From positions 124,001 to 188,000 of the IMG/VR virus record IMGVR_UViG_3300023184_000025: a stretch of 64,000 nucleotides of DNA. The stretch is one strand, 5' to 3'. The stretch's first letter is position 1; each line of letters begins with the position of its first letter. The notes under the pieces are model-generated. The model did not search any database. It had not been told where the DNA came from and worked only from the letters and a program-made list of their open reading frames with translations. Positions 1 to 59,200 of the stretch are shown here, one piece after another. The position numbers and the translations under genes were made by a program.

Positions 1-352
1 CTAAACTCCAACTAGCGGGCTGTGCTTGAAAATATGTTGTCTCTTCGGCAGTGACAGTTACTTTAGCTCTACCTGTTGGTGCATTAAGTGTTACAAGCTC
101 TTTGGCATATAACAAATTTTCTCCGTCTTGACTAATCATACGAAACGTAAACGTTGCGCCTGTGATGTTTACAGGTTTTTGGTCCTGGTTTAGAAATTGG
201 AATAAAATAACATTATCCACTCCTAAATTTAATTTTAAGTCTTTTGCGTACACTGGTTGCCACCTTCTATCAAAAGTTGAGCCAATGCCTGACGTGTCAA
301 TCAGAATTACCTGTTGGATTTGCTGATATAAATAGGCAGTGGTTGAATACAT
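1..352 (-). CDS. Virion/baseplate protein with BppU-N-like beta-sandwich; 3' end runs off the window (not in ORF track)
   Basis: Manual translation from ATG 352: MYSTTAYLYQQIQQVILID...GVDNVILFQFLNQDQKPVNITGATFTFRM...TGRAKVTVTAEET, open to position 1. The 'F-x-N-x-D-x-KPV-x-ITG' pattern resembles BppU N-terminal domains. CATAAATA lies upstream at 376-369. Confidence 0.7.
   Translation of the reverse strand, partial: MYSTTAYLYQQIQQVILIDTSGIGSTFDRRWQPVYAKDLKLNLGVDNVILFQFLNQDQKPVNITGATFTFRMISQDGENLLYAKELVTLNAPTGRAKVTVTAEETTYFQAQPASWSL
327..334 (+). promoter_or_regulatory. T4-type late promoter TATAAATA
   Basis: Exact T4 gp55 consensus about 40 nt upstream of ATG 374. Confidence 0.55.
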
Positions 353-373
353 TTGGATCTCCAACTAATATTT

Positions 374-751
374 ATGGGTGATAATATCTTTACAAAATTG
401 ACTAAAAAGTATCCGTTTATAACTCTGTGTTTATATGCAGGGATAGAATACGTAGGAATTATACAAAATCAAGATGACGCAATTACAACAATCTACGACT
501 TTGGTGATGTTTCTGACCCTGAACTAAAAAAGCTGTTTATTGAGCTGGCCAATGATTGGTGGTGGGAAAGTAACCATAGTATACCTATAAACATATACTT
601 AAAAGCAGAGTGGGCTCCATTTAAGCCATATTTAAGAACTTTTGCCAACAAAGACCTTGAAATATTACACGGACCTGTTTGCAGTTTAAGTGACATCTCT
701 CGACGAAAAAGTAAACGTAAATCAATTACATTAGTCAGGAAGATTGACTAA
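374..751 (+). CDS. Hypothetical protein (125 aa; ATG 374 preferred over TTG 353)
   Basis: Protein-like ORF downstream of TATAAATA; no family recognised. Confidence 0.75.
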   Translation: MGDNIFTKLTKKYPFITLCLYAGIEYVGIIQNQDDAITTIYDFGDVSDPELKKLFIELANDWWWESNHSIPINIYLKAEWAPFKPYLRTFANKDLEILHGPVCSLSDISRRKSKRKSITLVRKID

Positions 752-1331
752 TTTTTTCAAATTGATCTGCTTCGTTTAACAAATTCATGTGCAGGGCCAC
801 TAACACAGCATAGCTAATTGCATGTGATTTTTTAAATGTATATCCACGACTATCATCACCGTTCCAAACATCAGCAAAGACGGTGTTCCAATCTTTATTT
901 TGTAAGTGTGCTTTTCCTGGCCTAATAATACTGATAAACGCAGCCATCCTAGTTATTGAATCTGGTTGCATTGACTTTAACAATTCTGTATAGTTTCCAA
1001 CGTGTACCAACCGAGAAGCCCAGGCGTTATCTGTCCATAGTCTTGTCCATGTGGGTGTGGTTTTGATCATTTGATCATAGTGTTCAGGATTTTTAACCAA
1101 CTGATAAACGCTCATGTTTAAAAAGTCTATCTTAAAATATCCACGTTGTTCGGCTTCTTCGTAGTTTATAGCCGCACACTGATTCACTGGATCAAATGGA
1201 ATATCAGTAACGTAAACACCACTGTTGTGTCGACGCACTTGTTCATTAATTGACTGTCGTGCAGGAATATGCTGTATTAATTTTAATACTGTTTCTCTGT
1301 CAGCAAAATCAATATCAATATCTGCGCTCAT
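735..1331 (-). CDS. Miniature DNA polymerase III alpha (DnaE/C-family)-like protein, 198 aa
   Basis: Ordered motifs DIDIDF, RRHNSGVYV, GYFKIDFLN, MAAFISIIRPG and GYTFKKSHAISYA match DnaE PDFDVDF, GKHAGGVVI, GLVKFDFLG, ALVALFRPG and GYGFNKSHSAAYA. Start overlaps the upstream stop as TAATG (alternative ATG 1337). Confidence 0.85.
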   Translation of the reverse strand: MSADIDIDFADRETVLKLIQHIPARQSINEQVRRHNSGVYVTDIPFDPVNQCAAINYEEAEQRGYFKIDFLNMSVYQLVKNPEHYDQMIKTTPTWTRLWTDNAWASRLVHVGNYTELLKSMQPDSITRMAAFISIIRPGKAHLQNKDWNTVFADVWNGDDSRGYTFKKSHAISYAVLVALHMNLLNEADQFEKISQSS

Positions 1332-2005
1332 TACCATCCTGCCTTTGCTAAAATATCCTTAGCATACTCTTGATCTGCCATGTAATCTTTAAATTTTTGT
1401 TGCCAAACATCTGCGTCAATGTATGGCCATATCATTGCAATTTGATTTTCATCTAAGCTGTTTAGGAACTCCTGGCCACTGTCACAGTTGTAAATTATCC
1501 AAGGACTAATCTTGCCAGTGGTAATTGCATGACAGATTATATTGATGTTACCGTATCTAAGATAATCCTTTGATGCATGACCATTCTTCTCTTCCCAGTC
1601 AATACTATGTTCAATGGACCTGGCCAAAGCATCATTGACGGACTCAATTTTAAGATACCACAACAGATACTCTGTGTAGATAGTATCTTTACACCAATAA
1701 TCAAGTTTTTTATTTTGTTTGACCACCCATTCAGTAAACCTAGCTGGATTAATTGCTCGAATATCCACACAGTATCTACCAAACTTGGCAAATGCTCGAT
1801 AATACGAACTGTTGGCAAAGTCATCAAATGTTTTTAATTTGGCCGACCCTTGTGTGACTTCATAGAATTTTAAATATGCTTGGAACCCAAGCTGGACTCC
1901 GCGTTCATTCTGATCTTGTCTGCGCTTCTTTTGTTCACAGACGTGTACTGCTAAACTATTTTCTCTAGAAAAGTCTTTTTTACAATACTGGCACTGGTAT
2001 GTCAT
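1331..2005 (-). CDS. Protein with N-terminal Zn finger (CxxC-x12-HxC); C-terminus possibly gp59-like
   Basis: MTYQCQYCKKDFSRENSLAVHVCE at the N-terminus; coupled to both neighbours. The gp59 similarity is only a weak impression. Confidence 0.75.
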   Translation of the reverse strand: MTYQCQYCKKDFSRENSLAVHVCEQKKRRQDQNERGVQLGFQAYLKFYEVTQGSAKLKTFDDFANSSYYRAFAKFGRYCVDIRAINPARFTEWVVKQNKKLDYWCKDTIYTEYLLWYLKIESVNDALARSIEHSIDWEEKNGHASKDYLRYGNINIICHAITTGKISPWIIYNCDSGQEFLNSLDENQIAMIWPYIDADVWQQKFKDYMADQEYAKDILAKAGW

Positions 2006-2445
2006 TTTTCCTGACCGTGATCTTTAACGTATTCATCTAGTTCTTTTTTGGTGATTAACTTACTAAGCAATTCTATCTCGTCCATTTTTTTGGTTGGATA
2101 TAGTTCTGCCAACTGCTTCTTAATACTGCCAGCACCAGGTTCTTTTTTCTTTAGACCAATCCAGGGATGTCGTGGTGTTCCTAGGTCAGGACTAATAGCA
2201 GTAGCACACAACCACTGAAGTTTAGGATGTTTGTTTATAGCAAAAAAATGTTTGTTCAAGTAATGATTACAACTACGCACATAGTATGCTTGTATTTCAC
2301 TACTATCCTCAACACTACTACCCCAACGTATCATAAGATAGTTACTGAACTTTTTTAATTCTTCCGGAGTTAAACTATCATAGAAATTACGATTCTTGGT
2401 ATCAAGCTGGCGCATTTCGTTACTGATGTTTAGTTTATCTGACAT
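2002..2445 (-). CDS. gp62: Clamp-loader small subunit (T4 gp62-like)
   Basis: Size and pattern (KKFSNYLMIRW...HPKLQW...HPWIGLKKK...KKQLAELYP...IELLSKLITKKEL) resemble gp62 family members. Confidence 0.6.
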   Translation of the reverse strand: MSDKLNISNEMRQLDTKNRNFYDSLTPEELKKFSNYLMIRWGSSVEDSSEIQAYYVRSCNHYLNKHFFAINKHPKLQWLCATAISPDLGTPRHPWIGLKKKEPGAGSIKKQLAELYPTKKMDEIELLSKLITKKELDEYVKDHGQEK

Positions 2446-2638
2446 TACCAATTGCCTTTGACAATATATTAATATGGTTTTTCATACGGCCATGCTCTCG
2501 ATGAATACGTTCAATTTCGTTGGCCTGTTGTTTGAGTTTTTCTTCTAGTTCTGTGATCCGAGTGTCAAGGGGGTTAATTTCTTTTTTTAGAATAACCGGC
2601 ACTCGAGGTCGGTCAGCATCGTCTTTGTATTGTTCCAT
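2435..2638 (-). CDS. Small coiled-coil hypothetical protein
   Basis: Heptad-rich LDTRITELEEKLKQQANEIERIHRE; overlaps the downstream gene. Confidence 0.65.
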   Translation of the reverse strand: MEQYKDDADRPRVPVILKKEINPLDTRITELEEKLKQQANEIERIHREHGRMKNHINILSKAIGNVR

Positions 2639-2842
2639 TTAATAAAACCTATTAATAAATTTTTGGTATACTGGAGAAATCCACCGAATGGTTACAAAAG
2701 CAATTGGCCAAGCTGTTATCCAGTGTATTGCCCATAGTATTGCTTCTAAGTGAAAGTAGTCTTGGTGCATGTGAGTAACTGTGAATGTAATCATTCCGGT
2801 TGCAGTTAAACTTGTCAATAATTGTAATATCAACAGTTTCAT
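2639..2842 (-). CDS. Small two-helix membrane protein (DUF2798-like)
   Basis: Two hydrophobic segments; AWPIAFVTIRWISPVYQKFI resembles the DUF2798 C-terminal helix; abuts both neighbours. Confidence 0.6.
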   Translation of the reverse strand: MKLLILQLLTSLTATGMITFTVTHMHQDYFHLEAILWAIHWITAWPIAFVTIRWISPVYQKFINRFY

Positions 2843-3343
2843 TTACCAAGCCTTATTGTAGTCAACAATTTCACAGTTGCGACTAATATCTTTGACAAAA
2901 TATACACACTCAGGATTGTCCCCATCCTGAATAGGAACTGCTAGCATTTGCCCATTTTTAAGTTTAGGCGCATACCAGGCAACTTCATGATAAACATCAA
3001 TTATTTCAATCTCAGGAAAACTGGGTCTGAAACTGGTTAGAGGATTAAATTGGAAAGCTTTAAATCCTCGATCATTGATAGACGTCAACGGCAGTACTTC
3101 AAGGTCTCCCACGTCGGGTTCCCCGATTAAGATTTGCCAATCAACTGGCATACGAATTTGATTTTCACCAATACGTAATACCAGTGCTGGGCTATTAAAA
3201 CTTTCCAAAAAAATTAACGGAATGTAATGATAGTCTGGGTTTGATGGGTCACTGTTATCAAGTATTGCAAAACGCATGTCGTCAACTTCGTCGGGCAATG
3301 TATCTAAATCATAGCAGGTATTATCTAGTGTTAGTATTCTCAT
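2843..3343 (-). CDS. Conserved hypothetical protein, possibly a degenerate stand-alone Hint-fold domain
   Basis: Clear ORF with its own promoter; strand pattern follows Hint blocks but catalytic residues are absent (see findings). Confidence 0.75.
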   Translation of the reverse strand: MRILTLDNTCYDLDTLPDEVDDMRFAILDNSDPSNPDYHYIPLIFLESFNSPALVLRIGENQIRMPVDWQILIGEPDVGDLEVLPLTSINDRGFKAFQFNPLTSFRPSFPEIEIIDVYHEVAWYAPKLKNGQMLAVPIQDGDNPECVYFVKDISRNCEIVDYNKAW

Positions 3344-3350
3344 AGTATGT

Positions 3351-3378
3351 ATTATACAGTATTATTGCAGAAAGTCAA
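3351..3378 (-). promoter_or_regulatory. Sigma70-type promoter TTGACT-N16-TATAAT, 7 nt before ATG 3343 (leaderless geometry)
   Basis: -35 at 3378-3373, -10 at 3356-3351. Confidence 0.55.
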
Positions 3379-3381
3379 CGG

Positions 3382-4848
3382 TTACTTGATGGTCATCCAT
3401 TCTAATTTTTCAGCTGAGAATGGGTAGTTGGCTTCTTTGTAAAACTGTTTTCGTTTGGTCATGTGCCGTTTTGCAAATTTGCAGGTACTAGTTATATCCC
3501 AAATTTGAACATGGTCTTTATCTTCTGCTTTTCTAATGCCCCTACCAATAGATTGAATAACCCTGACAAAGCTTTTGCCTGGTTCGATCAACACCAAGTT
3601 AAAAATTCTCGGTATGTTAATCCCAACTGCTGCCACACCGTAAGTGGCAACAATAATTTTACCTGTTGATTCTGCAATTTCATCATAGTGTTCTTGTCTT
3701 TCTGTGCCTTTGGTTGCACCCGAAACAAATACTGCCTTGTCTCCAAGACGCAGGGCCAGTGCTTGTCCTGCACTAATCCTATCAACAAGAACCAAGGTGT
3801 TACCAGTTTCGTTCACCTGTTTAATTAAGCTAGCAATTGTATCCAGTCTTCCTGATTCTTCTAGTAAGTATTTTAGCTCACTTTGGTAGTTGCTGTACTC
3901 AACATGATCAACTAGCTGTACAATGTTCACATGGCATTGTGCTAGTACACCCCTGTCTTGTAATTCACTAGCGGCTAACTTGCTAATAACCGGTCCTAAG
4001 CTAACATGCAATGCTTCAAATTCAAACTGTTCTTTTGGCACAGTACCAGTTAATCCCCAACGAATCGGCACTTCAGACATCACGCTGGTCAGCAAAGTTT
4101 TTAACGCATCTGCTTTGGCCATGTGTACTTCATCTACAATAACACATACAACGCCTTCGATAAAGTCCCCGATACTGACCTCAGCTTCACCTGACTTTGT
4201 GTTCTTCATCATGTTGTTGAGACTCTGCCAGGTACAGATTGTATGTGTTTTATTATACTCTTTTCTGTCACCAAAATACACGCCAACGTCGAGTCCAAGA
4301 TTAATGTAATCTTTTTCTGTTTGTCTCACTAGGTCTTTGTTGGGAACAATAACAATGCTACGTCCGTATTGTTGTATGCTATAACTCATAGCCGCAGTCA
4401 TAATTGTCTTGCCTGCGCCTGTGGCTACTTCTTGTATGCATTGTGGGTTTTGTAAAAAGTTGTTGACTATCTCTACCTGATAGTCACGCAACATAATTGG
4501 TTGGCCTTCCATCAGATGATTCTTGGGCCAATTTGTTTCAGCAAATGTATCTTCCTTGACTAGCGTAAAATCAAAGGTGGTACGATATTCTCGCAAATCC
4601 TCTACGTCAATGTCGTAGTTGTAGTCTTCTAGGATGGGAATGATCTCTGGCAGTAGATTTACATAGGTACTGCCGCCTAGTTGGAAGAAGCTGACCTTAC
4701 CATCCCATCTGCCCAGTCTTACCGCCGGAAGATATCGTGCATAAGGAACATCGTACTTAAATTTGTTTACTAAGGCACGCCTAGCAGTTAAATCAAGTCC
4801 TTCAATCTTTAAATTTACTTCGTCTCTGATTATTAATTTAGCCTGCAT
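3382..4848 (-). CDS. uvsW: UvsW-like SF2 DNA helicase
   Basis: Q-motif LRDYQ, Walker A ATGAGKT, DEVH, GLTGT, QSIGRGIR; T4-like context. Confidence 0.93.
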   Translation of the reverse strand: MQAKLIIRDEVNLKIEGLDLTARRALVNKFKYDVPYARYLPAVRLGRWDGKVSFFQLGGSTYVNLLPEIIPILEDYNYDIDVEDLREYRTTFDFTLVKEDTFAETNWPKNHLMEGQPIMLRDYQVEIVNNFLQNPQCIQEVATGAGKTIMTAAMSYSIQQYGRSIVIVPNKDLVRQTEKDYINLGLDVGVYFGDRKEYNKTHTICTWQSLNNMMKNTKSGEAEVSIGDFIEGVVCVIVDEVHMAKADALKTLLTSVMSEVPIRWGLTGTVPKEQFEFEALHVSLGPVISKLAASELQDRGVLAQCHVNIVQLVDHVEYSNYQSELKYLLEESGRLDTIASLIKQVNETGNTLVLVDRISAGQALALRLGDKAVFVSGATKGTERQEHYDEIAESTGKIIVATYGVAAVGINIPRIFNLVLIEPGKSFVRVIQSIGRGIRKAEDKDHVQIWDITSTCKFAKRHMTKRKQFYKEANYPFSAEKLEWMTIK

Positions 4849-5383
4849 AATTTTGTAGTTTCAGCCATTCTTGGTAAAAGTTATTATCCAGTTCAGGTGA
4901 TTCTACATAGTTAGCAAGATCCTCAACAGCATACCCTGATAGTATGCGTTCAAGTGTAACAATCTTTTTTGTATGTGTCTTTACCATATTAGAGTAGTCT
5001 ATCAATGTTTTTGCATATCCTGCAACGTCATTGGCACCGCAGAACTGTTGCATCTCTTCCCACACATTTGGTCTGTGTAACTGTTTGAATCTTTCTGCGG
5101 CCCACAATGCTGTGTCAAACTTATTTACAGTAACAGTAATAAAATCTTGACCTGCACTAACATGATAGGTTAAATCATGACTGGGTAAGCTATTATACAC
5201 TAAACTAATGTTTTGTACATACTGAGTTTTTTCTAAATCATTTAAAAAGGTGTGAGGTTTATTTAGTCGACATCTTTCTGCAGGCATCCTAACTGCTGTT
5301 TTTGATAATTCGCAGTTGGTGGAATCTATTATGGCCGCTAACACATGACCGCAGGTTCCGCCTGTATAACAAACAATGTTCAC
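4838..5383 (-). CDS. Hypothetical protein with sulfotransferase/P-loop-like N-terminal motif
   Basis: GTG 5383 overlaps the upstream TGA (GTGA); N-terminal VCYTGGTCGHVLAAII. Confidence 0.65.
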   Translation of the reverse strand: MNIVCYTGGTCGHVLAAIIDSTNCELSKTAVRMPAERCRLNKPHTFLNDLEKTQYVQNISLVYNSLPSHDLTYHVSAGQDFITVTVNKFDTALWAAERFKQLHRPNVWEEMQQFCGANDVAGYAKTLIDYSNMVKTHTKKIVTLERILSGYAVEDLANYVESPELDNNFYQEWLKLQNYAG

Positions 5384-6045
5384 GGTTGGTATTGCCAATG
5401 TATTTTAACATTGCCATTGATCATATCATCAACTTCGGGTAGCCAAGTATAATCAACAAGAGTGTCATTTATATTGATTATGTCATAGTTAACTCGCAAC
5501 AACTTAAATCCGTGTTGTTCCATGCTTAACAACCATGCTTGCAGTAACAAGCTAAAATTGTACTTTAATCGATTATGGAAAATAAAGATATCTCTAAAAG
5601 AGAAAAATATTTGTGTGCCTGTCTTTAAGAACCTGGTTTGAAATTGCCAATACTCTGTGTACTCATCAAATGTTTTCCACCTTAATCTAATAGTGTTGTT
5701 AACAATAAAATTGTCAGCTTGGTTGTACAAATGTTTAACAGAATCTTCTCCTGTGTCAATGACAGCCTTTGGGTACCAGGACAGTACCAAAGGTACTAGT
5801 TCAATTACTGTTAAATTGTCAATTGCAGGGTCAAGATAATATCCAGCACCATCATAGGTAACAGTTTTACCTGGATTAAGATGTTCAATAATATACTTGT
5901 CGTAGTTGTCAAGTATGATTTCTTTTGAATGTCGGTTTCTTACAAAATAGTTATGCTTGGGTTTGCTAAATTTCCATCTTGTGTAACTGGTTCTAAAGTC
6001 TGTTCTTAGAACTGCGTCTGCATATTTTCCAATTACTTTCGACAT
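5380..6045 (-). CDS. Hypothetical protein (221 aa)
   Basis: Long ORF overlapping both neighbours. Confidence 0.7.
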   Translation of the reverse strand: MSKVIGKYADAVLRTDFRTSYTRWKFSKPKHNYFVRNRHSKEIILDNYDKYIIEHLNPGKTVTYDGAGYYLDPAIDNLTVIELVPLVLSWYPKAVIDTGEDSVKHLYNQADNFIVNNTIRLRWKTFDEYTEYWQFQTRFLKTGTQIFFSFRDIFIFHNRLKYNFSLLLQAWLLSMEQHGFKLLRVNYDIININDTLVDYTWLPEVDDMINGNVKIHWQYQP

Positions 6046-6563
6046 AACAATAACTCACATGATGGTACTACCCAGGTAAAACAACTGCCGTCTTCGACAA
6101 ATATTTCGCTACGGTTTAATACAACAGTATCATTGAGATTCTTTTCTAACCATTTGACAATAGCTGTATCAAAGTGTTCAGGTAAATTATGATCAACAAA
6201 TGTTTCTGCGGCATTTAAATAATAACGATTCAAACAAAAGTAAATCCTAGGACATAAATCCAATAACAAATTTAGTTCTGTAATCATATTTTTTACTGTG
6301 AGCCTGCTAAATCGTTGATCGGTGATTACAACTAGTTCAGCATCATTGGGTGCCACCAGTTGAATATTGTGTTTATCAAAAAACTTATCTAATATTTTGT
6401 TATCTTTGAGCACATGAACTTTGATGATACCATTGTTAATGATATAGTCCTCGATGTTTTTTTCCCTACGAATTTTGCACTCCTCGGCAAATAGTCGTAG
6501 CTGTAGTCTACCCCAATTTGGGTGTCGCCATACTTTAGGATGTTTTTCAAACGTGATATTCAT
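6033..6563 (-). CDS. Hypothetical protein (176 aa)
   Basis: ORF with TAAATA (6578-6573) 9 nt before the ATG. Confidence 0.7.
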   Translation of the reverse strand: MNITFEKHPKVWRHPNWGRLQLRLFAEECKIRREKNIEDYIINNGIIKVHVLKDNKILDKFFDKHNIQLVAPNDAELVVITDQRFSRLTVKNMITELNLLLDLCPRIYFCLNRYYLNAAETFVDHNLPEHFDTAIVKWLEKNLNDTVVLNRSEIFVEDGSCFTWVVPSCELLLCRK

Positions 6564-6597
6564 AGGATCTTGTATTTACGGCACTCCTTACCACAAA

Positions 6598-6627
6598 TAA
6601 AAAAAGAGGTACCCTAAAGTACCCCTT
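6598..6627 (-). terminator. Rho-independent terminator after the AAA ATPase gene
   Basis: Minus strand AAGGGGTAC-TTTAGG-GTACCTCTT (one G-U pair) followed by a T tract. Confidence 0.75.
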
Positions 6628-6683
6628 AAACGGATCATCTAGGAGCTAGACTAAAATGATGATCCGGTAACTTTAACTGCTAA

Positions 6684-7715
6684 TTAGGCACTCTTCATAC
6701 ATGTTGTCTCACTCATGCGCTTCCAGTTATTAGGAAAGCTCTTGCGCAGGTCTGCAATCTTGAGCGCCATACGCAAGGATACCTCACGCAAACGATCTTT
6801 GTTGACATGCATGAACTCAATAATGTCGTCTTGTGCATACTCGTTAAAGTCGTAGTCTGCAAACAACACGCCATCTTTGGCAATCTGTTTGATGCGCAAC
6901 AACTTGTCACGCATGGTGTCCAGGGTCAAGTCCAGGTAGTGACAACGTGACTGCAACGCATCCAGGTGATCCCGCAATTTTTGCGACTTCATTTGGTCAA
7001 ATTTTAAATTTGTAATAAAGATAACACTACCTTTAAACTCAAAACGGTCTGGGATACCTTCACGGCGCAGAGCACTGGATTCTGACAACCAGGAGATAAC
7101 ACGTTTCTTGCTGGAGTCCAAGGCACCCTTGAGCAAGTTAAGGGCAACGTCATCTAACAAGATGCTGTCGCAGTCATCAAACACCACCACAGAGTTGGCG
7201 TCAGAAAACTTGTACAAGACTTGATATAGTCCAATTGGTGTGGCACTTCCCTTGACTACCTCTGCACGGAGTCGTTTACTAGCAAGCTTGTCAAACAAGC
7301 AGGCCTTGTCAATCTCTTGCTCCACGCCAAAGCTCTTGCCCACACCTGGAGGACCGCTCACAATCATAGCACGGATGTCACCACTGACACAGGCTTTGGT
7401 CATGTCGTGCAGGATGTCAAATCTCTCACGAATACGGTCCATTGCTTGCTCGTCGGTTTCCACCGGAGCAGTATGTTTAAATTCCACTACCTTGTTTTCT
7501 TTTACACTGGGCATATTATCTCCAACAATTTCAATATCTTGAATACCATCAACTTTGATGCGTACCACATCGTGTTCTGCGCCAAAGTAGCCATTGCTTT
7601 CTACTGTTACAAAGCCGCCTCGAGCACCTTGTGTGTAGTCTTTAACTAGTGTAAAAGTAACACCACGAACAGTTTGTTTGCGATAGTTACCGCTACGAAC
7701 GAGTACTTGCGTCAT
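6684..7715 (-). CDS. AAA+ P-loop ATPase of unknown function with small N-terminal beta domain
   Basis: Walker A GPPGVGKS, Walker B VVVFDDCD, sensor-1-like IFITN, Arg-finger-like SRC. Confidence 0.88.
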   Translation of the reverse strand: MTQVLVRSGNYRKQTVRGVTFTLVKDYTQGARGGFVTVESNGYFGAEHDVVRIKVDGIQDIEIVGDNMPSVKENKVVEFKHTAPVETDEQAMDRIRERFDILHDMTKACVSGDIRAMIVSGPPGVGKSFGVEQEIDKACLFDKLASKRLRAEVVKGSATPIGLYQVLYKFSDANSVVVFDDCDSILLDDVALNLLKGALDSSKKRVISWLSESSALRREGIPDRFEFKGSVIFITNLKFDQMKSQKLRDHLDALQSRCHYLDLTLDTMRDKLLRIKQIAKDGVLFADYDFNEYAQDDIIEFMHVNKDRLREVSLRMALKIADLRKSFPNNWKRMSETTCMKSA

Positions 7716-7748
7716 TGATCAGGCTCCTGTTTTGTTAACTTATGCTAT

Positions 7749-7777
7749 ATTATAGCAAACTGTGAATTACCGGTCAA
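7749..7777 (-). promoter_or_regulatory. Early sigma70 promoter TTGACC-N17-TATAAT (TGn extended -10)
   Basis: -35 at 7777-7772, -10 at 7754-7749; upstream of the AGGAG SD of the ATPase. Confidence 0.8.
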
Positions 7778-7840
7778 CTATTAGTTGATCTTGTTGCAAA
7801 CAATACAAAACTTGTATTCCTTGCTACTTATTATTCTATA

Positions 7841-7869
7841 ATTATAGCAAAAACCTATTTAATGGTCAA
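7841..7869 (-). promoter_or_regulatory. Second early sigma70 promoter TTGACC-N17-TATAAT (TGn extended -10)
   Basis: -35 at 7869-7864, -10 at 7846-7841. Confidence 0.75.
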
Positions 7870-7924
7870 CCAGGATTTTTTGCCTATTTTTTAAGCAGTT
7901 TTTGGATGTTGTTTTTGTGCAACA

Positions 7925-7953
7925 AAAGAAAAACCCTACTACTAGTAGGGTTT
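7925..7953 (-). terminator. Rho-independent terminator
   Basis: Perfect 10-bp stem AAACCCTACT/AGTAGGGTTT, 3-nt loop, T-rich tail on the minus strand. Confidence 0.8.
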
Positions 7954-7982
7954 GATAAGAAAACTGCTTAATTTTTAAGCGT

Positions 7983-8555
7983 TTATTCAACAGGTAGTGC
8001 CCTGTTAACTTTCTGTGTGCAAGTCAATGTGCTTTCGTTAGTAATTAAATATTGCCATCTACCAACTTGTGCAGGGTCGGTTGGATTTTTATCAGGAACC
8101 GTTACTCCGTTAATCTGAACGTTTTCTCTTCCATCGCCACCAGTAACAAAATTATCCACAGTCACAAAATTATCCACAGATGCCATTACAAAGGTTCTTC
8201 CTGGATCGTCAGCACTAAAAATTGGTCCAGCAGGAATAGAGTCAGGATTGTTTTTGTCTGGCAAACGACTTGGATCTACTGTGTATACGTCGCCACCGTA
8301 ATTAGCGGTAATTTTGCCCCAGAATAAATCACCACCGGTCACAGTTAAAGTCAACGGAATTTCACCATATACAGAAGTGTCTGCTTCAAATGTAAACAGT
8401 TCCGATAGGCCGTCGTTGTTAGTCCCAGGAGTTGCCCCGGCTGATGCAGATACTGCGCCTGTAAATACTGCTTGATTGTTAAAATTTAACCTTACTATTA
8501 CAGGTCCAACTGTAGTGAATGCGTTACCATAAAATTTAAATGTGCGTGTAGCCAT
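7983..8555 (-). CDS. Late beta-rich hypothetical protein, probably virion-associated
   Basis: TATAAATA plus AGGAG SD upstream; own terminator; G/T/N/V-rich. Confidence 0.75.
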   Translation of the reverse strand: MATRTFKFYGNAFTTVGPVIVRLNFNNQAVFTGAVSASAGATPGTNNDGLSELFTFEADTSVYGEIPLTLTVTGGDLFWGKITANYGGDVYTVDPSRLPDKNNPDSIPAGPIFSADDPGRTFVMASVDNFVTVDNFVTGGDGRENVQINGVTVPDKNPTDPAQVGRWQYLITNESTLTCTQKVNRALPVE

Positions 8556-8575
8556 TGTGTTATCTCCTATTGCAG

Positions 8576-9295
8576 TTATTTATACCGGATCCAAAACTTC
8601 TGCACAACCGGATCGGTAATTTCGTGAGGTTTGGGATTTCCGTGAAAAATAGCAATACGTGTTGTGGGATCTAATAATGTGCCTGCACCAGGACGACGAT
8701 ATTTTCTTGTTTTAAAGTCAAGACCTCCGTCCAGTAATTGCCAACGCCAGCTTTTGATTAAATTACTGTCAAAGAACCGTATATCCTTTGGGTTTAATGT
8801 TGCTGACAAATAGTCCTGATCACCTGGATATTTTCTTATTAAGTCTGCCAGATTTTGCTTTAAAAAGTCATCCCAGATATAGCTAAATTTAACTGTGTCC
8901 CAAAGCATTAAACTTGAGTTAATTCCTGCCCAATCTCGCCACAGGTATTTAAAATCTTTAATTGTCCAAAAATACTTGCTACTATCGCTCCATAAACAGT
9001 CTATGTTTTCAAATATAACCGTGTCAAGATCTAAGTACAACATTCTGCCCTGAAAATGTTCTGGGTTAAAAAGTTGTAACTTGTACCACCAACTTTGTCT
9101 AGGTCCAGAAACTCCTGGCCAATCTATTAATTCGTGTTTGATAAAAGGTGGCGGTACACCACGAAAAGCTTCTGTGTAAACATGAAATCGCACGTCCATG
9201 CTGACGTTTCTACAAATCATATGATATAAAGTATCAACATAGGACCAGTTATATTTGTCTCCATGTATCAAACATGCGCAGTCAATTGTGGTCAT
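8576..9295 (-). CDS. GT8-like glycosyltransferase (GT-A fold)
   Basis: MLYLDLDTVIF (DxD), NSSLM, GDQDYL, IFHGNPKP. Confidence 0.85.
   Translation of the reverse strand: MTTIDCACLIHGDKYNWSYVDTLYHMICRNVSMDVRFHVYTEAFRGVPPPFIKHELIDWPGVSGPRQSWWYKLQLFNPEHFQGRMLYLDLDTVIFENIDCLWSDSSKYFWTIKDFKYLWRDWAGINSSLMLWDTVKFSYIWDDFLKQNLADLIRKYPGDQDYLSATLNPKDIRFFDSNLIKSWRWQLLDGGLDFKTRKYRRPGAGTLLDPTTRIAIFHGNPKPHEITDPVVQKFWIRYK
8577..8584 (-). promoter_or_regulatory. T4-type late promoter TATAAATA
   Basis: Exact consensus upstream of the SD and ATG 8555. Confidence 0.75.
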
Positions 9296-10083
9296 AAAGG
9301 TGGGTTATGCCAAAAGTGTGGATATTGTTGTAATACCTGTTGTACCAGTGCAGGATACACAGTTGAGACAACATGGGTAGTACACTTATGATTGATAGCT
9401 GATATTGTGTCTAACTGTTTAAAAGCATGCAATACTTGCTCAGGATCTCTGTGTTGACTTTCTATACAACTAACCACTTTATTTTTTATTAGATCATCAC
9501 TGCCCATCCAGGTCCAGTGCCAGCCAACTGATTCATCTAGACCAACACAATGACTACGGTTTTTTCTTTTAACTACTGCTAGATTGCCTTTGTACAAGTC
9601 ATGCGGTGTTTCAAACATACCACGCCTGGCAACCACACTACCTTTCCATCCACGATCTGCACGTTGGTCAACTCGGTACATATACATATCAAATCCACAA
9701 CTTACTGGCCTATTATGTTGATCCATTTGATTAACAATTTTACTCCACTTGGTTGGATCAATGACCTCGTCGAGATCTCCGTGAATAACAATATCATCTG
9801 AATTGCAACTGCCAAGTGCAGTTTTAAATCCCTGTCTCATTGCCGTTTCGCAAATCAGGTTAGTCTGATCAGCAGTTAGTGGTAATCGAATTACTTGTAT
9901 TCTGTCTGAGTATTTGTCATTGTACTTTTTTAAATTGTCAGTCAAGTAATAGGGCTTTTCAATACCACTAAATGTTCTACTTGCTTCTAAAACTATCCAG
10001 CGATCTACATAGTGGTCGGTAATTGCTAGATGTATGTCTAGCATGTCAAATTCGTTGTTAAACAATAAGGTGTCAATGACCAT
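9292..10083 (-). CDS. GT17-like glycosyltransferase (beta-1,4-GlcNAc transferase family)
   Basis: FNNEFDMLDIHL, VDRWIVLEASRTFSG-x-x-KP, HGDLDEV, GWHWTW. Confidence 0.8.
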   Translation of the reverse strand: MVIDTLLFNNEFDMLDIHLAITDHYVDRWIVLEASRTFSGIEKPYYLTDNLKKYNDKYSDRIQVIRLPLTADQTNLICETAMRQGFKTALGSCNSDDIVIHGDLDEVIDPTKWSKIVNQMDQHNRPVSCGFDMYMYRVDQRADRGWKGSVVARRGMFETPHDLYKGNLAVVKRKNRSHCVGLDESVGWHWTWMGSDDLIKNKVVSCIESQHRDPEQVLHAFKQLDTISAINHKCTTHVVSTVYPALVQQVLQQYPHFWHNPPL

Positions 10084-10084
10084 T

Positions 10085-10723
10085 TTAAAACTTATAAATT
10101 ATTTGATATTCATCGTACACAGGATGTTTACCTTTTGATTCAAGATATTCAACAATTCTACGACCTTTGCCAGTTCTTAGATTTGTGTTTTTGAATCTGC
10201 TGTTGTCATCTATTGCCACAATGCATCCTGATTTTAAGTAAGATTCGATTACTTTAAATTCGTTTAAATGGTGCTCGGCGCTGTCCTTATCATTTTCCCA
10301 CTTGACGTCCCACGAATCTAAGTAAAACAAATCAACCATGGATAAATCAGACTGTTCGCTCAACCAAGTTACGCTGTCACTGCATGTGACTTTGAAATTT
10401 TTTGACAGTATTGCTGTTGATGCTGAGGCACAGGCACCCGGGTCAATATCCACTGACCTCACGGACCCGTTGTGCATATCTACAAATTCAGTGAATAATT
10501 TTGCACTCTGACCGTCTTTCCAGTTGCCCGGATTTCGTAGAGTGCCAGTTTCAATTATGTGGTACTGATCTTGACTACGATTTACTAGTTCAGCAAACAT
10601 AATGTTGAATCCGTGTGCTCGTTGATATAGTCCATCAACTAACCCTCGCTTTATTGCGCTAACACGTGGATTTAATAAATTGTAATAATTTTTTCGGTAA
10701 AACTCTAACCAGTCTTGTTTCAT
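10085..10723 (-). CDS. Class I SAM methyltransferase (Methyltransf_24-like)
   Basis: IIETGT, VRSVDID, CSDSVTWL, DLFYLDS, IVAIDD. Confidence 0.8.
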   Translation of the reverse strand: MKQDWLEFYRKNYYNLLNPRVSAIKRGLVDGLYQRAHGFNIMFAELVNRSQDQYHIIETGTLRNPGNWKDGQSAKLFTEFVDMHNGSVRSVDIDPGACASASTAILSKNFKVTCSDSVTWLSEQSDLSMVDLFYLDSWDVKWENDKDSAEHHLNEFKVIESYLKSGCIVAIDDNSRFKNTNLRTGKGRRIVEYLESKGKHPVYDEYQIIYKF

Positions 10724-10730
10724 TCTTTAT

Positions 10731-11312
10731 TTAAAGTAAATTGTTATCAGCTGTTGGTTTTGTAACCAACCAACAACGGCCTGATCTGTGTACTTTTATA
10801 TTCATTGGTCCAAAAAAATCCCAAACGGCCTGTTGAACTCCTGGGTAACCTTTTGTGTAGTCATCACCGGCAAACATAGAACCTGGGCGCATTTTTGGCC
10901 ACCAGGCAGTGAGATCTTTTGTTACTGCTTCATAGCTGTGGCCAGCATCCACGTAACAAAAGTCTACAGATTGATCTTGAAATTGGTTGGCTGCGTTCCA
11001 ACTCATCATGGTCAACATAGTGATTGAATCTATCACTGGTTCGATATTTTTACGGAAAATATTTTCCATGTTCTGCACTACACCTTGATCGTATGCTATA
11101 TCAGACTCACCTTTCCAACTGTCTACACAATAAAATTCACCTAACTTGTCTTGATTGATTAACTCAACCACGCAATATGCCGCACTACGCCCTGTCCAAG
11201 ATCCTAGCTCAACCCAGGTGCCGTTTTTAGGGAATTGTTCTAACACAAGGTCAAGCATGACTGTGTTTCTAACGCTCATAAATCCGTCTATGCCTTGATA
11301 AAAGTGGTCCAT
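10731..11312 (-). CDS. Class I SAM methyltransferase (Methyltransf_24-like); start revised to ATG 11312
   Basis: WVELGSWTGRSA, YCVDSW, DFCYVDAGHSYEAVTKDL, GDDY; TAAATA 4 nt before ATG 11312. Confidence 0.85.
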   Translation of the reverse strand: MDHFYQGIDGFMSVRNTVMLDLVLEQFPKNGTWVELGSWTGRSAAYCVVELINQDKLGEFYCVDSWKGESDIAYDQGVVQNMENIFRKNIEPVIDSITMLTMMSWNAANQFQDQSVDFCYVDAGHSYEAVTKDLTAWWPKMRPGSMFAGDDYTKGYPGVQQAVWDFFGPMNIKVHRSGRCWLVTKPTADNNLL

Positions 11313-11316
11313 ATTA

Positions 11317-11344
11317 TATTTACCATAATATACGTAGATAAATA
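11317..11344. promoter_or_regulatory. Back-to-back divergent late promoters (TAAATA minus 11322-11317; TAAATA plus 11339-11344)
   Basis: 4 and 5 nt from ATG 11312 and ATG 11350 respectively. Confidence 0.65.
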
Positions 11345-56203: not shown

Positions 56204-59200
56204 TTATAGTCGACCTACCACAACTTCAATAACGCCTTCTGTGCCATTAAAGTCGGATAATGCCTTACCAATAACTGTACCAATCTGTGGACTTGTGCAA
56301 GCACAAGCACGACCGTCACCTGCAGAAATCATCATGTCACCTTTACGTACTGTGCCAACTACTTTGGTTGGAACACGACCGGTCAACGCAACAATTGCTG
56401 TGTATTCAGCTTCTAATCCTGAGTTCATGATGTAACTTGGATTTGTAGAAATAACACCTGCCACACTACTTGCGCCAGTGCCAGCTATGGTAACTTCTTT
56501 TGATCCGCCAAACATCATAACAGTACCCGGTTCATACGTAGCGTCTGATTCGTAGTACTCTGCCAAGTCAGCGTACTGAGCTGATGTTGCTTTGGCAAAC
56601 ACAGTATTAAAGTATGTTGTACTTGAACCAATATTACCAACACCGTTGGCGTTGCTATTTACAATGTTGCCACCAGTAATGGTTCCTGTACTGACACTCA
56701 GGTTACCACCAGTGATGTTGCCAGTAACTGTCAATGATCCCAGTGTACCAACTGAAGTAATGTTGGTTTGTGCCGCAGTGGTCAATGTTCCCACAATGTT
56801 GGTACCCGATAGGTTACCACCAGTGACGTTGCCAGATACACCAAGTCCACCTATGATAATAGCAGTACCTGTAGCGGTTGTAGTAGAAGTTGTGTTGGGT
56901 GCATTCAGCTTCATTGCCACGTTGGCTGCCATACTGCCAGCAACTGCAAATCTAATTTGTCCACCAATGTCAACAGCGCCAAGTACTAGATCACTTGGAT
57001 TACCTGCGGCCACATTACCTGTAACGTACAAATACGCATCATTAGGAGTAACTGAGGTACCCATGGCGTTGTTGAGAACTGCTGTGGCACCGTTATATGT
57101 GCTACTGGCAATACCAAAGTCAGCATAATATGTGGCGTCATTACCGTTGTTTGAAGTCAACACCCAGTCACTTGTGGCTGTGTTTCCTGCACTTTGGTTC
57201 TGATTGTTAATCTGAGCGTAGTCATCGTACTGTGATACAAAGTTGACCACAGACTGTGGTAGTATACTAAATCCAGCTGGCAGACCAGCGTACAAGGCAT
57301 TGAAACCAGTGGATGCATTACCAAAGAATTGACCTGAGTTACCAGATATCTGTTGGATGTTACCCGCAATGGTTGTTGTACCAGACACATACAAGTTACC
57401 AATTGTGGCATTACCTGTTGACATGGCAATGCCTCCTGGTGTAATATTACCAGTAACTGTCAATGAACCTAAAGTACCCACGGCAGTAATATTTGTCTGA
57501 CTTGCAGTGGTTAATGTTCCCACAATGTTGGTACCCGATAGGTTACCACCTGTGATGTTGCCAGATACACCTAGTGTACCAGTAATATTGGCTCCTGTGG
57601 AGGCAAATACTGCCACATTTGATGTAGCACCAATACTAACTGTGGCATTGCCGCCCGAGCTCACAACTTTAACATTACTTGTGCCACTTTGAATACTAGT
57701 TGCATCAATACCGGTTAGTTGACTACCATTACCTAGTACGTAGTTACCAGTGATGTTGCCTGTTGCAGTGATATAACCTGTGACATTGGCACCTGTACTA
57801 GTCACAACCGCAACGTTGGCTGTGCCAGCTGAGCTAACAGTGACGTTGCCACTGGCAAATGCTCTAACATTACTTGTACCATTCTGTATACTTGTGGCGT
57901 CAATACCAGTCAACAGACTACCATTACCTAGTACGTAGTTACCAGTGATGTTGCCTGTTGCAGTGATATAACCTGTGACGTTGGCACCGCCTGAGCTTAG
58001 AGTTTGTACTGTTGCACCTGCAATATTGGCACGAACGTTACCACCTGAAGTAAGCACAGATACTGCACTGGTACCGTTGGCAATGGTTGTTGTGTCAACG
58101 CTTGAGCTAGCAATGGTTGCAGGAGTTGTACCATCTGCGGCATAGAATGCCATTTGTCCATTCACTGCTTTGAGCTGTAGGTTGCCTAGGTAAATTGTGC
58201 TACCAGACACATACAAGCTATTCCACCAGCTTGTTGCATTGCCCAATGAGAACGTTGCATTGGCTGTTGGCAAAATATTACCTGTGGCTGAAAGTGTTCC
58301 CTGGCCGTCAACTGCCTCAAGAATTGCAGAACCTGTGGCATTTTGAAGTGCTGTAACTGTGGTTGTAGTTGTTAAAATACGTGCATCAATCACGTCTGTT
58401 GTCAACGGAGCTTCAGTGAATGTCAGCACATTGCCTGTTACAGAATAAGCACTGGTTGGAATCTGTACAACGCCGTTGATTGCAACAATAGTACTGGCAG
58501 TTGTGGAATTTTCACTGAGTACAAACGCTGTTTGGCTGTTAGTCCCGTTGAATTGATCAGAAACAACAACAGTAAATGTTGTACCTGCTGACGTCCACTT
58601 GGAGTTGTCATAGTACTCTAAACTGTTAGATGATGTGTTAAAACGCATCATACCAGTTACACCACTACCTGGACGCTGTAGTGTATTACCCACTGGCATA
58701 ACAATACTAGTTGCAGAATTAAATGCCACTAAGGCATTAACTGTTTGAGTTGCATTTCCAAAGCTGGCTGTGTTTGCTCCGGCATCCACATAAAATACAT
58801 TGGCGGCACCACCATTCACTGCAAAGTCAACGTCGCCCAGGGCTGTGTTAAAGTTTACTCGTCCATTTGTGTCAGTAATGTTATCACCACTGATTTGAAT
58901 GTTGCCTATGTTGGCTTGGCCAGCTGTGGTAATGTTACCGCCAGTGATGTTACCAGTTACACCCAGTGTACCTACAACAGTACCGTTGCCGGTTACTGCC
59001 AGTGTAGCAATATTGGCAATACCTGCTGTGGTTACGTTACCACCAGTGATGTTACCAGTTACACCCAGTGTGCCTACAACAGTACCATTGCCGGTTACTG
59101 CCAGTGTGCCAATGTTGGCAATACCTGCTGTGGTTACGTTACCACCAGTGATGTTGCCTGTGGCCACAATCAAACCAGCTGTGCCTAGGTTACCCACATT

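What the first reader, a model, noticed from the sequence alone, without database searches (positions are those of the whole stretch)
735..1331. 198-aa miniature DnaE: C-family catalytic core without PHP, thumb or most fingers
Seen: five DnaE motifs in order, including counterparts of all three catalytic aspartates (DIDIDF and KIDF) and the KSH motif. The thumb between DIDIDF and HNSG and the YQEQ/RRAMGKK fingers segment are cleanly missing. Known: bacterial DnaE is over 1000 aa, and T4-like phages normally replicate with a family-B gp43. Inference: this is too small to be a processive replicase, yet the catalytic residues are kept. It may be a distinct nucleotidyltransferase (primer synthesis, end-tailing, gap filling or signal nucleotide synthesis), or one subunit of a split enzyme with the coupled Zn-finger and gp62-like genes.
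Basis: partly seen in the sequence, partly recalled or inferred. Interest (0 to 1): 0.85.

Follow-up and report, generated by a model that had tools for sequence, protein, structure and literature searches.

The report
Half of a split mini DnaE polymerase
This 198-residue phage protein is the metal-binding half of a two-piece, stripped-down relative of the bacterial replicative polymerase DnaE; the family was described by sequence analysis in 2021, I found its partner half about 95 kb away in the same phage genome, and its activity has never been tested.

Summary
Window 735-1331 (minus strand) encodes a 198-aa protein whose motifs DIDIDF, HNSG, KIDF, IIRPGK and FKKSH match E. coli Pol III alpha residues 401-406, 511-514, 553-556, 637-641 and 756-760, in that order. 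The PHP domain, the thumb and the YQEQ/RRAMGKK finger segment are absent. Profile and fold searches hit only C-family polymerases. The gene is under strong purifying selection (dN/dS about 0.08).

It is not a new kind of protein. It belongs to PHROG 11778 and is the C-terminal unit of the "split minimal DNA polymerase III alpha" that Iyer et al. (2021) described in group 2.2 jumbo phages.

The missing NTP-binding piece carries the GRGS motif (E. coli 319-392). It is a separate 174-aa protein encoded 95.6 kb downstream in the same genome, next to a GroES-like gene and the clamp loader.

The adjacent zinc-finger protein has an all-helical fold with no match to any solved structure. The "gp62-like" ORF shows no gp62 similarity. 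Both are nevertheless conserved neighbours of this gene.

I found no experimental work on the family, so the biochemical activity remains open.

The parts
735..1331 (-). C-terminal unit of the split minimal Pol III alpha (198 aa; an alternative ATG at 1337 would give 200 aa)
   Evidence: ORF list. phrog_11778 full-length match, E 2.4e-55. The PDB profile search hit only Pol III alpha. AF2 model pLDDT 96, and Foldseek hits are only C-family polymerases. Family dN/dS about 0.08.
1305..1322 (-). DIDIDF motif: D6 and D8 are the counterparts of catalytic D401 and D403 of E. coli alpha; D10 matches D405
   Evidence: Codons read directly from the sequence. Alignment to E. coli 399-418. D6 and D8 are invariant and D10 is at least 90% conserved in 82-84 diverse homologues.
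1218..1229 (-). HNSG motif on a predicted beta-hairpin, counterpart of E. coli HAGG 511-514
   Evidence: H37 and G40 are at least 90% conserved. The E. coli sequence was read. The equivalence rests on motif order and inspection, because HMMER did not align this stretch. Hairpin E24-30/E33-42 is in the AF2 model.
1122..1133 (-). KIDF motif: K69 and D71 are the counterparts of K553 and the third catalytic aspartate D555
   Evidence: Alignment of positions 55-140 to E. coli 539-641. K69 and D71 are invariant.
912..929 (-). IIRPGK, first finger segment, counterpart of E. coli LFRPGP 637-642
   Evidence: P140 is invariant; I138, R139 and K142 are at least 90% conserved.
822..836 (-). FKKSH motif, counterpart of E. 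coli FNKSH 756-760
   Evidence: Alignment of positions 154-180 to E. coli 742-769. K169 and H172 are at least 90% conserved.
1331..2005 (-). Upstream, translationally coupled 224-aa protein with an N-terminal C-x2-C-x12-H-x-C zinc knuckle and an all-helical body. It is a conserved neighbour, not a DnaE piece.
   Evidence: phrog_11058. Homologues lie upstream of the C-unit in 77 related loci, including Phosso, Paride, Atu_ph07 and PBECO4. C5, C8, H21 and C23 are invariant. AF2 pLDDT 92; best Foldseek PDB probability 0.08.
2002..2451 (-).
   Evidence: phrog_11758. Conserved in synteny in 71 loci. No PDB match including T4 gp62, and no Pfam or NCBIfam match.
353..751 (+). Convergent small ORF (125-132 aa) overlapping the 3' end of the C-unit gene; conserved in relatives
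   Evidence: phrog_11637, E 4e-33. An opposite-strand small CDS sits at the same place in Phosso, Paride, Atu_ph07, PBECO4 and the fusion scaffold L404.
3382..4848 (-). UvsW-like superfamily-2 helicase that opens the conserved block helicase / small ORFs / C-unit / primase / DnaB
   Evidence: Pfam ResIII, DEAD and Helicase_C, plus a weak UvsW_N match. The same order is seen in cultured relatives and in the sister contig.

Best explanation
The ORF encodes the C-terminal unit of a two-piece, minimal C-family (Pol III alpha / DnaE-type) nucleotidyltransferase. This enzyme is typical of T4-related 'group 2.2' jumbo phages.

This unit carries the metal-binding strands of the Pol-beta-like palm: DxD on the first strand, the HxxG hairpin, and KxD on the third strand. 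It also carries a shortened finger module (RPGK and KSH motifs), which Iyer et al. assign to template-DNA binding. It lacks the helix-loop with the GRGS motif that holds the incoming nucleotide's triphosphate. A separate 174-aa N-terminal unit supplies that piece. Its gene lies 95.6 kb downstream in the same genome, beside a GroES-like gene and the RFC-type clamp loader.

The split falls between the counterparts of E. coli residues 392 and 399. The two proteins most likely associate to rebuild one active site.

Shown:
- homology, the residue mapping and the fold;
- conservation and purifying selection;
- the existence and position of the partner gene;
- conserved synteny of both halves with replication genes.

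Inferred:
- the two halves form a heterodimer;
- the heterodimer is catalytically active;
- it acts as an auxiliary, short-patch or specialised DNA polymerase alongside the phage's main replicase, rather than as a processive replicase. It has no thumb, no PHP or proofreading module, no clamp- or tau-binding tail, and no counterpart of finger arginines R709/R710.
For: - phrog_11778 'DNA polymerase', full-length match, E 2.4e-55, and phrog_405 (DnaE-type), E 1.3e-6.
- A profile of 84 homologues hits only Pol III alpha in the PDB, in three collinear segments. The mapping was checked on real E. coli dnaE.
- AF2 pLDDT 96, pTM 0.89. Foldseek top hits are all Pol III alpha or phage DnaE.
- D6, D8, K69 and D71 are invariant across homologues at 27-65% identity.
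- 80 of 80 related loci carry an intact ORF; median dN/dS 0.076.
- The N-unit profile maps to E. coli 319-392 and ends exactly before the C-unit starts.
- An N-unit (174 aa, PF07733...WGVGRGSSVASY...EFLR) lies on the contig that is 100% identical to the window over 11.3 kb, 95.6 kb from the C-unit.
- C-units and N-units occur in 96 and 92 phage records, with nearly the same counts per host genus.
- A natural in-frame N+C fusion exists, P0179, 375 aa.
- 71 of 71 clamp-loader loci with enough upstream DNA carry an N-unit just upstream.
- The C-unit always lies between a UvsW-like helicase and primase/DnaB.
- Iyer et al. 2021 describe the same split minimal Pol III alpha (PMC7824862).
Against: - No biochemical or genetic data exist for any member; none was found in four literature searches or in the papers read.
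- Heterodimer formation is inferred only from complementarity, co-occurrence and one fusion seen on a single 2.4-kb scaffold.
- The finger arginines, which contact the dNTP in Pol III alpha according to the literature as I recall it, and the thumb have no counterpart. Template-dependent DNA synthesis is therefore not assured.
- A family B polymerase, expected in this phage group, was not seen in the roughly 168 kb of this genome that I could read. Its presence here is assumed from relatives.
- I could not model the two halves together.
Confidence: 0.72

Rival explanations
1. The 198-aa protein works alone as a distinct small nucleotidyltransferase (primer synthesis, tailing or signal nucleotide synthesis), using only its own three aspartates.
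For: The catalytic carboxylates are invariant and the protein folds confidently on its own. Its gene is far from the N-unit gene: 95.6 kb here and 182 kb in Atu_ph07.
Against: It begins at the DxD strand and has no GS nucleotide-binding loop. A complementary N-unit co-occurs in essentially the same phages and in this genome. A natural fusion of the two exists.
Confidence: 0.08
2. The enzyme is split with its immediate neighbours: the coupled zinc-finger protein and/or the 149-aa ORF supply the missing palm, thumb or fingers, or are obligatory subunits.
For: There is a stop/start overlap (TAATG) with the zinc-finger ORF. Both neighbours are conserved upstream of the C-unit, from environmental relatives to Phosso, PA5oct-like phages, Atu_ph07 and PBECO4.
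Against: The zinc-finger protein model (pLDDT 92) is all-helical and has no structural match to DnaE or to anything else in the PDB. The 149-aa family has no gp62, Pfam or PDB similarity. The sequence that is actually missing, the GRGS segment, is found in another protein. An accessory role, such as DNA or partner binding, is not excluded.
Confidence: 0.12
3. It is a decaying fragment of a once full-length phage dnaE.
For: It covers only about 17% of the length of a bacterial DnaE, with two clean internal deletions.
Against: About 6,500 clusters at 90% identity hold proteins of nearly the same length, mostly 192 aa among those listed. 80 of 80 related loci are intact, with median dN/dS 0.076. 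The catalytic residues are invariant, and synteny is conserved across phages of alpha- and gammaproteobacteria.
Confidence: 0.01
4. The pair has lost polymerase function and serves a non-catalytic role in the replisome, such as a scaffold or a DNA- or clamp-loader-binding factor.
For: The thumb, the finger arginines and the clamp-binding tail are lost. Both genes are tightly linked to other replisome genes.
Against: All three metal-binding aspartates, K69 and the GRGS motif of the partner are invariant or nearly so over deep divergence. This is hard to explain without catalysis.
Confidence: 0.07

Closest known systems
Split minimal DNA polymerase III alpha of group 2.2 jumbo phages (Iyer, Anantharaman, Krishnan, Burroughs & Aravind 2021, Viruses 13:63), C-terminal 'Mg2+- and DNA-template-binding' unit; PHROG 11778
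   Same: The length, motifs and stand-alone status are the same. The N-terminal NTP-binding unit is encoded at a distance. The host genome is a 345-kb contractile-tailed phage with T4-type replication genes. The gene neighbourhood matches that of PA5oct-like, Rak2-like (121Q/PBECO4), Atu_ph07 and Phosso phages.
   Different: It shares only 33-44% identity with the cultured members. It belongs to a freshwater/environmental lineage in which the two genes are 95.6 kb apart, against about 30 kb in Rak2-like phages, 44 kb in PA5oct and 182 kb in Atu_ph07.
Bacterial replicative Pol III alpha (DnaE; E. coli 2HNH/5FKV, Taq 2HPI/3E0D/4IQJ, M. tuberculosis 5LEW)
   Same: It shares the Pol-beta-like palm strands with D401, D403 and D555, the HAGG hairpin, K553, the RPG finger segment and the KSH motif, all in the same order.
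   Different: There is no PHP domain. The N-terminal palm segment with the GS loop sits on another protein. The thumb and about 100 residues of the fingers, including YQEQ and RRAMGKK, are absent. There is no beta-clamp motif, OB fold or tau-binding domain. The protein has 198 residues against 1160.
Full-length phage DnaE-type polymerases (e.g. Bacillus phage G group 3.2, Gordonia, Streptomyces and Lactobacillus phages; PHROG 405)
   Same: They are the best structural matches among viral proteins and give a weak profile match.
   Different: They are single polypeptides of 570-1470 residues with a PHP domain and full fingers, and they are the phage's main replicase. Here the enzyme comes in two small pieces, and according to Iyer et al. 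it accompanies a family B polymerase.

Membership tests
C-family DNA polymerase catalytic core (Pol III alpha / DnaE) | Three catalytic carboxylates on the Pol-beta-like palm (E. coli D401, D403, D555) | tested here: met
   D6, D8 and D71 align to D401, D403 and D555 and are invariant in 82-84 homologues.
C-family DNA polymerase catalytic core (Pol III alpha / DnaE) | Nucleotide-binding GS loop (E. coli R362-G363-S364) on the same polypeptide | tested here: not met
   The ORF starts at the counterpart of E. coli residue 399. The GRGS segment (E. coli 319-392) is on a separate 174-aa protein.
C-family DNA polymerase catalytic core (Pol III alpha / DnaE) | N-terminal PHP domain | tested here: not met
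   Nothing precedes the DxD motif, and there is no PHP hit in Pfam, NCBIfam or PHROGs.
C-family DNA polymerase catalytic core (Pol III alpha / DnaE) | Thumb domain between the DxD strand and the HAGG hairpin | tested here: not met
   18 residues separate the end of the first aligned segment (residue 21) from H37..G40, against about 92 in E. coli (residues 419-510).
C-family DNA polymerase catalytic core (Pol III alpha / DnaE) | Complete fingers including YQEQ and RRAMGKK (E. coli 686-689 and 709-715) | tested here: not met
   Profile positions 140-154 bridge E. coli 641 to 742. Neither motif is present in the sequence.
C-family DNA polymerase catalytic core (Pol III alpha / DnaE) | KSH finger motif (E. 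coli K758-S759-H760) | tested here: met
   FKKSH at residues 168-172 aligns to FNKSH 756-760. K169 and H172 are at least 90% conserved.
C-family DNA polymerase catalytic core (Pol III alpha / DnaE) | C-terminal clamp-binding, OB and tau-binding modules | tested here: not met
   The protein ends 28 residues after KSH.
C-family DNA polymerase catalytic core (Pol III alpha / DnaE) | Template-directed DNA polymerase activity | not testable with these tools
   This needs biochemistry. No experimental report was found.
Split minimal Pol III alpha of group 2.2 jumbo phages, C-terminal unit (PHROG 11778) | Full-length match to the family profile as a stand-alone protein of about 190-200 aa | tested here: met
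   phrog_11778, E 2.4e-55, residues 5-189 against profile positions 7-193 of 197. Homologues are 33-44% identical in Phosso, PA5oct-like phages, Atu_ph07 and PBECO4.
Split minimal Pol III alpha of group 2.2 jumbo phages, C-terminal unit (PHROG 11778) | A separately encoded N-terminal NTP-binding unit in the same genome | tested here: met
   L406:14930-15454 encodes a 174-aa PF07733 protein, E 7e-56 to the N-unit profile. It lies on ENA contig k141_1370736, which is 100% identical to window 1-11331, 95.6 kb downstream of the C-unit on the same strand.
Split minimal Pol III alpha of group 2.2 jumbo phages, C-terminal unit (PHROG 11778) | Conserved neighbourhood: UvsW-like helicase, small ORFs, C-unit, convergent small ORF, primase, DnaB-type helicase | tested here: met
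   Window plus sister contig compared with Phosso, Paride, Atu_ph07 and PBECO4.
Split minimal Pol III alpha of group 2.2 jumbo phages, C-terminal unit (PHROG 11778) | The genome is a T4-related jumbo myophage that also encodes a family B DNA polymerase | tested here: inconclusive
   The contig is 345,154 bp and carries a tail sheath, large terminase, DnaB, primase and an RFC-like clamp loader. No family B polymerase was seen in the roughly 168 kb read, and the remaining 177 kb or so could not be read.
T4 gp62 (small clamp-loader subunit), claimed for the neighbouring ORF 2002-2451 | Sequence or profile similarity to gp62 | tested here: not met
   A profile of 27 homologues finds no gp62 chain in the PDB (best hit E 0.19, a homeodomain protein). 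No Pfam, NCBIfam or annotated PHROG match.

The most novel reading that the evidence does not exclude
The N+C heterodimer is not a conventional template-copying polymerase. It would instead be a minimal C-family nucleotidyltransferase with a different chemistry or substrate, for example de novo primer synthesis, template-independent end extension, or handling of modified nucleotides. The support is that it has shed the thumb and the finger arginines yet keeps the metal site under strong selection, and that its two genes are wired to the primase/helicase module and the clamp-loader module respectively. If so, it would also be the smallest known C-family catalytic core and a working model for the ancestral enzyme, as Iyer et al. 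proposed.
Probability: 0.15. Interest if true: 0.8.

Novelty: new member of a known kind. Interest (0 to 1): 0.4.

Why it matters
C-family polymerases are known as large, multi-domain bacterial replicases. A two-piece version totalling about 370 residues would define the minimal catalytic core of the family. It bears on how that family arose, because the published proposal treats it as an ancestral-like state. It would also add a second polymerase activity to the replisomes of a large and environmentally abundant clade of jumbo phages: about 6,500 C-unit and 3,100 N-unit protein clusters at 90% identity.

The idea is already in the literature, so this window adds a new environmental member rather than a discovery. 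This analysis adds the following:
- exact residue mapping of the split point;
- location of the partner in the same genome;
- strict linkage of the N-unit gene to the clamp loader;
- evidence of strong purifying selection;
- a natural fusion;
- the finding that the conserved zinc-finger neighbour has an unmatched fold.

The function is still untested and is easy to test in E. coli and Pseudomonas phages.

Tried and rejected
- A single-sequence search of the PDB found nothing relevant. The relationship only appears with a profile.
- Pfam gave only a sub-threshold DNA_pol3_finger hit. NCBIfam gave only sub-threshold DnaE hits.
- Megablast of the first 12 kb against cultured phages found no match.
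- Looking for the N-unit inside the window with the GRGS regex, phmmer and two HMMs on all six frames found nothing.
- Several attempts to fetch the N-unit of this genome from IMG/VR failed. I tried profile-based locus searches, a degenerate DNA pattern, and single-protein searches with an N-unit and a clamp loader of a related phage. The returned lists are truncated and the window's contig never appeared.
- I then walked along the identical ENA contig in 10-kb steps. Nine walking look-ups found nothing, and the tenth, which was the last of the 12 look-ups allowed, found it.
- I tried to build one alignment carrying both halves on the natural fusion P0179, so that the reconstituted enzyme could be modelled. 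MAFFT placed either the N-units or the C-units correctly but never both, under six settings and with bridging fragments. That model was therefore not run.
I rebuilt the alignment without them.
- I rejected the gp62-like reading of ORF 2002-2451, the reading of the zinc-finger ORF as a DnaE piece, and the decaying-fragment reading.
Full report
**What is there.**
- The feature is an ORF on the minus strand, 735-1337 (200 aa, MVMSADIDIDF...).
- Gene callers on identical contigs, and nearly all homologues, start at the third codon.
- On the minus strand the junction with the upstream ORF reads AGGATGGTAATG. The upstream stop TAA overlaps the ATG at 1331, and an AGGA lies 5 nt before it. This is a classic coupled start.
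- Residue numbers below follow the 200-aa form, because the alignments were made with it.

**Is it DnaE-like?**
- PHROGs gives a full-length match to phrog_11778, annotated 'DNA polymerase' (E 2.4e-55). It also gives a weaker match to phrog_405, a 1190-position DnaE-type family (E 1.3e-6, residues 51-147 against positions 577-684).
- Pfam and NCBIfam give only sub-threshold DnaE finger hits.
- A profile of 84 homologues at 27-65% identity, searched against all PDB sequences, returns only Pol III alpha chains from E. coli, M. tuberculosis and Thermus (E 5e-5 to 3e-4). The match is in three collinear pieces: positions 4-21 with E. coli 399-418, 55-140 with 539-641, and 154-180 with 742-769.
- I fetched E. 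coli K-12 dnaE and read the residues. The mapping is:
  - D6, D8, D10 correspond to D401, D403, D405.
  - K69 and D71 correspond to K553 and D555.
  - IIRPG corresponds to LFRPG 637-641.
  - FKKSH corresponds to FNKSH 756-760.
  - By motif order, HNSG (37-40) corresponds to HAGG (511-514). HMMER did not align this stretch.
- E. coli 419-510 and 642-738 (with YQEQ 686-689 and RRAMGKK 709-715) have no counterpart. I recall the thumb as residues 433-510 from Lamers et al. 2006.
- Nothing precedes the DxD strand, and the protein ends 28 residues after KSH.
- An AlphaFold2 model built on 82 sequences is very confident (pLDDT 96, pTM 0.89).
- Its top ten Foldseek hits in the PDB are all Pol III alpha (probability 0.66-1.00, nine of them at or above 0.96), and the next hit drops below 0.1. 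Its top 21 hits among predicted viral structures are phage DnaE-type polymerases.

**Is it alive?**
- The family is very large: 6,566 clusters at 90% identity, and those listed are mostly 192 aa. There are 367 representatives at 50% identity.
- Across 82-84 diverse members, D6, D8, K69, D71 and P140 are invariant. D10, H37, G40, R139, K142, K169 and H172 are at least 90% conserved.
- In 80 IMG/VR loci the ORF is intact in all 80. Median pairwise dN/dS is 0.076, range 0.036-0.16, over 95 pairs.
- It is not a decaying fragment.

**It is already described.**
- tblastn finds the protein in 96 cultured phage genomes, all below 60% identity. These include Sinorhizobium phage Phosso, PA5oct-like Pseudomonas phages, Agrobacterium phage Atu_ph07, Xanthomonas phages, and the Rak2-like group (121Q, PBECO4). 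Annotations vary between 'hypothetical', 'DNA polymerase' and 'DnaE-like DNA polymerase III alpha'.
- Iyer et al. [quoted passage not shown]
- The window ORF is the C-terminal unit.
- I found no experimental study. A 2026 review of jumbo phages does not mention it. Earlier genome papers only annotate the N-unit as Pol III alpha.

**The partner.**
- One metagenomic protein, P0179 (375 aa), has the C-unit at residues 190-373. Its N-terminal half contains ...GVGRGSSSAS...EFIK.
- Using that half as a query finds a 170-182-aa protein in 92 phage records, with nearly the same counts per host genus as for the C-unit.
- Its profile aligns to E. coli alpha 319-392 (E 2.2e-5). That stretch includes R362-G363-S364 and ends at ...ERFL, six residues before the point where the C-unit alignment begins. 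The split therefore falls between E. coli 392 and 399.
- No N-unit is encoded in the window.
- The window comes from IMG/VR contig IMGVR_UViG_3300023184_000025, 345,154 bp. ENA contig k141_1370736 is 100% identical to window 1-11331.
- Walking along that contig, I found a 174-aa PF07733 protein 95.6 kb downstream of the C-unit on the same strand. It reads ...NRVIWGVGRGSSVASYVLYLLEVHQVDSLHYDLDPTEFLR and scores E 7e-56 against the N-unit profile. It is followed by a GroES-like gene and a 306-aa RFC-type clamp loader.
- The distance between the two genes varies: about 30 kb in Rak2-like phages, 44 kb in PA5oct, 182 kb in Atu_ph07, and about 5 kb in two environmental contigs.

**Neighbourhoods.**
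- The C-unit always sits in the block UvsW-like helicase / 3-5 small ORFs / C-unit / convergent small ORF / 1-2 ORFs / primase / DnaB-type helicase.
- The N-unit is always followed by a small ORF, a GroES-like gene and the clamp loader.
- Of 79 IMG/VR clamp-loader loci, 71 have an N-unit within 6 kb upstream on the same strand. The other 8 simply lack upstream DNA.
- Both halves are thus embedded in replication modules.

- The coupled 224-aa ORF (1331-2005) has an invariant C5-C8-H21-C23 zinc knuckle and is conserved upstream of the C-unit in 77 loci, including the cultured relatives.
- Its AF2 model (pLDDT 92) is all-helical and matches nothing in the PDB (best probability 0.08). It is not the missing palm, thumb or finger piece.
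- The 149-aa ORF (2002-2451) is also conserved in synteny. A 27-sequence profile finds no gp62 and nothing else.
- Either protein could still be an accessory factor. That is untested.

**How it most likely works.**
- The C-unit carries the three metal-binding carboxylates, K69 and the RPGK and KSH finger remnants.
- The N-unit carries the GRGS loop, which in Pol-beta-type nucleotidyltransferases holds the triphosphate.
- Together they rebuild one active site.
- Supporting this are the exact complementarity of the split, the co-occurrence of the two units, the partner's presence in this genome, and a natural in-frame fusion. The fusion junction reads ...EFIKDNKEGIYNIADFDID..., with a linker about as long as in E. 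coli, although it is seen on a single 2.4-kb scaffold.
- The pair lacks the PHP domain, the thumb, finger arginines R709/R710 and all clamp- or tau-binding modules. It is therefore unlikely to be a processive replicase.
- An auxiliary polymerase working with the primase-helicase and clamp-loader machinery is the best guess. Heterodimer formation, catalysis and substrate are all inferences.

**Limits.**
- I could not model the two halves together, because MAFFT would not co-align them on the fusion.
- I read about 168 kb of the 345-kb genome and did not see a family B polymerase in it.

**Verdict.**
- This is a new environmental member of a family described by computation in 2021. Its biochemistry remains open and is readily testable.

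Noticed in passing
L003 (Atu_ph07, NC_042013.1) 6001-6561: The RefSeq CDS for the Atu_ph07 C-unit starts at locus position 6067. The protein match begins at 6001, and an in-frame ATG at 5986 gives MKNIPDIDIDF. The annotated protein therefore lacks the DxD catalytic motif, which looks like a start-codon mis-annotation.
   Followed up: partly
L404 (ENA scaffold XIEF21-1_...scaffold_211374) 1066-2193; BFVD entry A0A249Y020: P0179 is a natural in-frame fusion of the N-unit and C-unit (375 aa), seen on a single 2.4-kb scaffold. A 374-aa viral protein in BFVD also matches the C-unit model (probability 0.99) and may be a second fused or unsplit form.
   Followed up: partly
L247 (IMGVR_UViG_3300045450_000131) 1915-2499 and 7463-7522; L283: In two environmental contigs the N-unit and C-unit genes lie only about 5 kb apart on the same strand, unlike the 30-180 kb seen elsewhere.
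   Followed up: no
window 2435-2638 and 2639-2842 (minus strand): Two tandem 67-aa ORFs lie between the helicase block and the 149-aa ORF. One carries a DUF2798 hit in the precomputed Pfam table and looks hydrophobic.
   Followed up: no
L172-L175, L297-L299, L403-L406 (same genome, 0-104 kb beyond window position 1): There is an unusually rich set of auxiliary genes. They include NifU-like and HesB-like Fe-S assembly proteins, three radical-SAM proteins, class I ribonucleotide reductase with glutaredoxin, ClpX/ClpS/ClpP/HSP20, Fe/Mn superoxide dismutase and NAD synthase. Also present are an eIF-1A-like protein, a glutamate-type transporter with its binding protein and an Asp/Glu racemase, UvdE, a PAAR protein, a fatty-acid desaturase and PhoH.
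   Followed up: no
window 56204-61234 (minus strand, 1676 aa): Short stretches of this very large ORF (window 56333-56698) resemble, at 71-79% nucleotide identity, DNA about 6-8 kb from the N-unit motif in two other environmental phages (L199, L204). Fibre-like genes likewise precede the N-unit in L226 and in this genome (L406). In this genome the N-unit / clamp-loader module follows a different fibre-like gene, which suggests rearrangement of modules.
   Followed up: no
window 1331-2005 (minus strand): The zinc-knuckle protein upstream gives a confident all-helical model with no structural relative in the PDB. It is a conserved orphan fold within the replication module of this phage clade.
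   Followed up: yes
L005 13485-14549 (same genome, between primase and DnaB): A 354-aa protein between the primase and the DnaB-type helicase has a weak ZapE/AAA hit (E 0.003). It may be a helicase loader.
   Followed up: no
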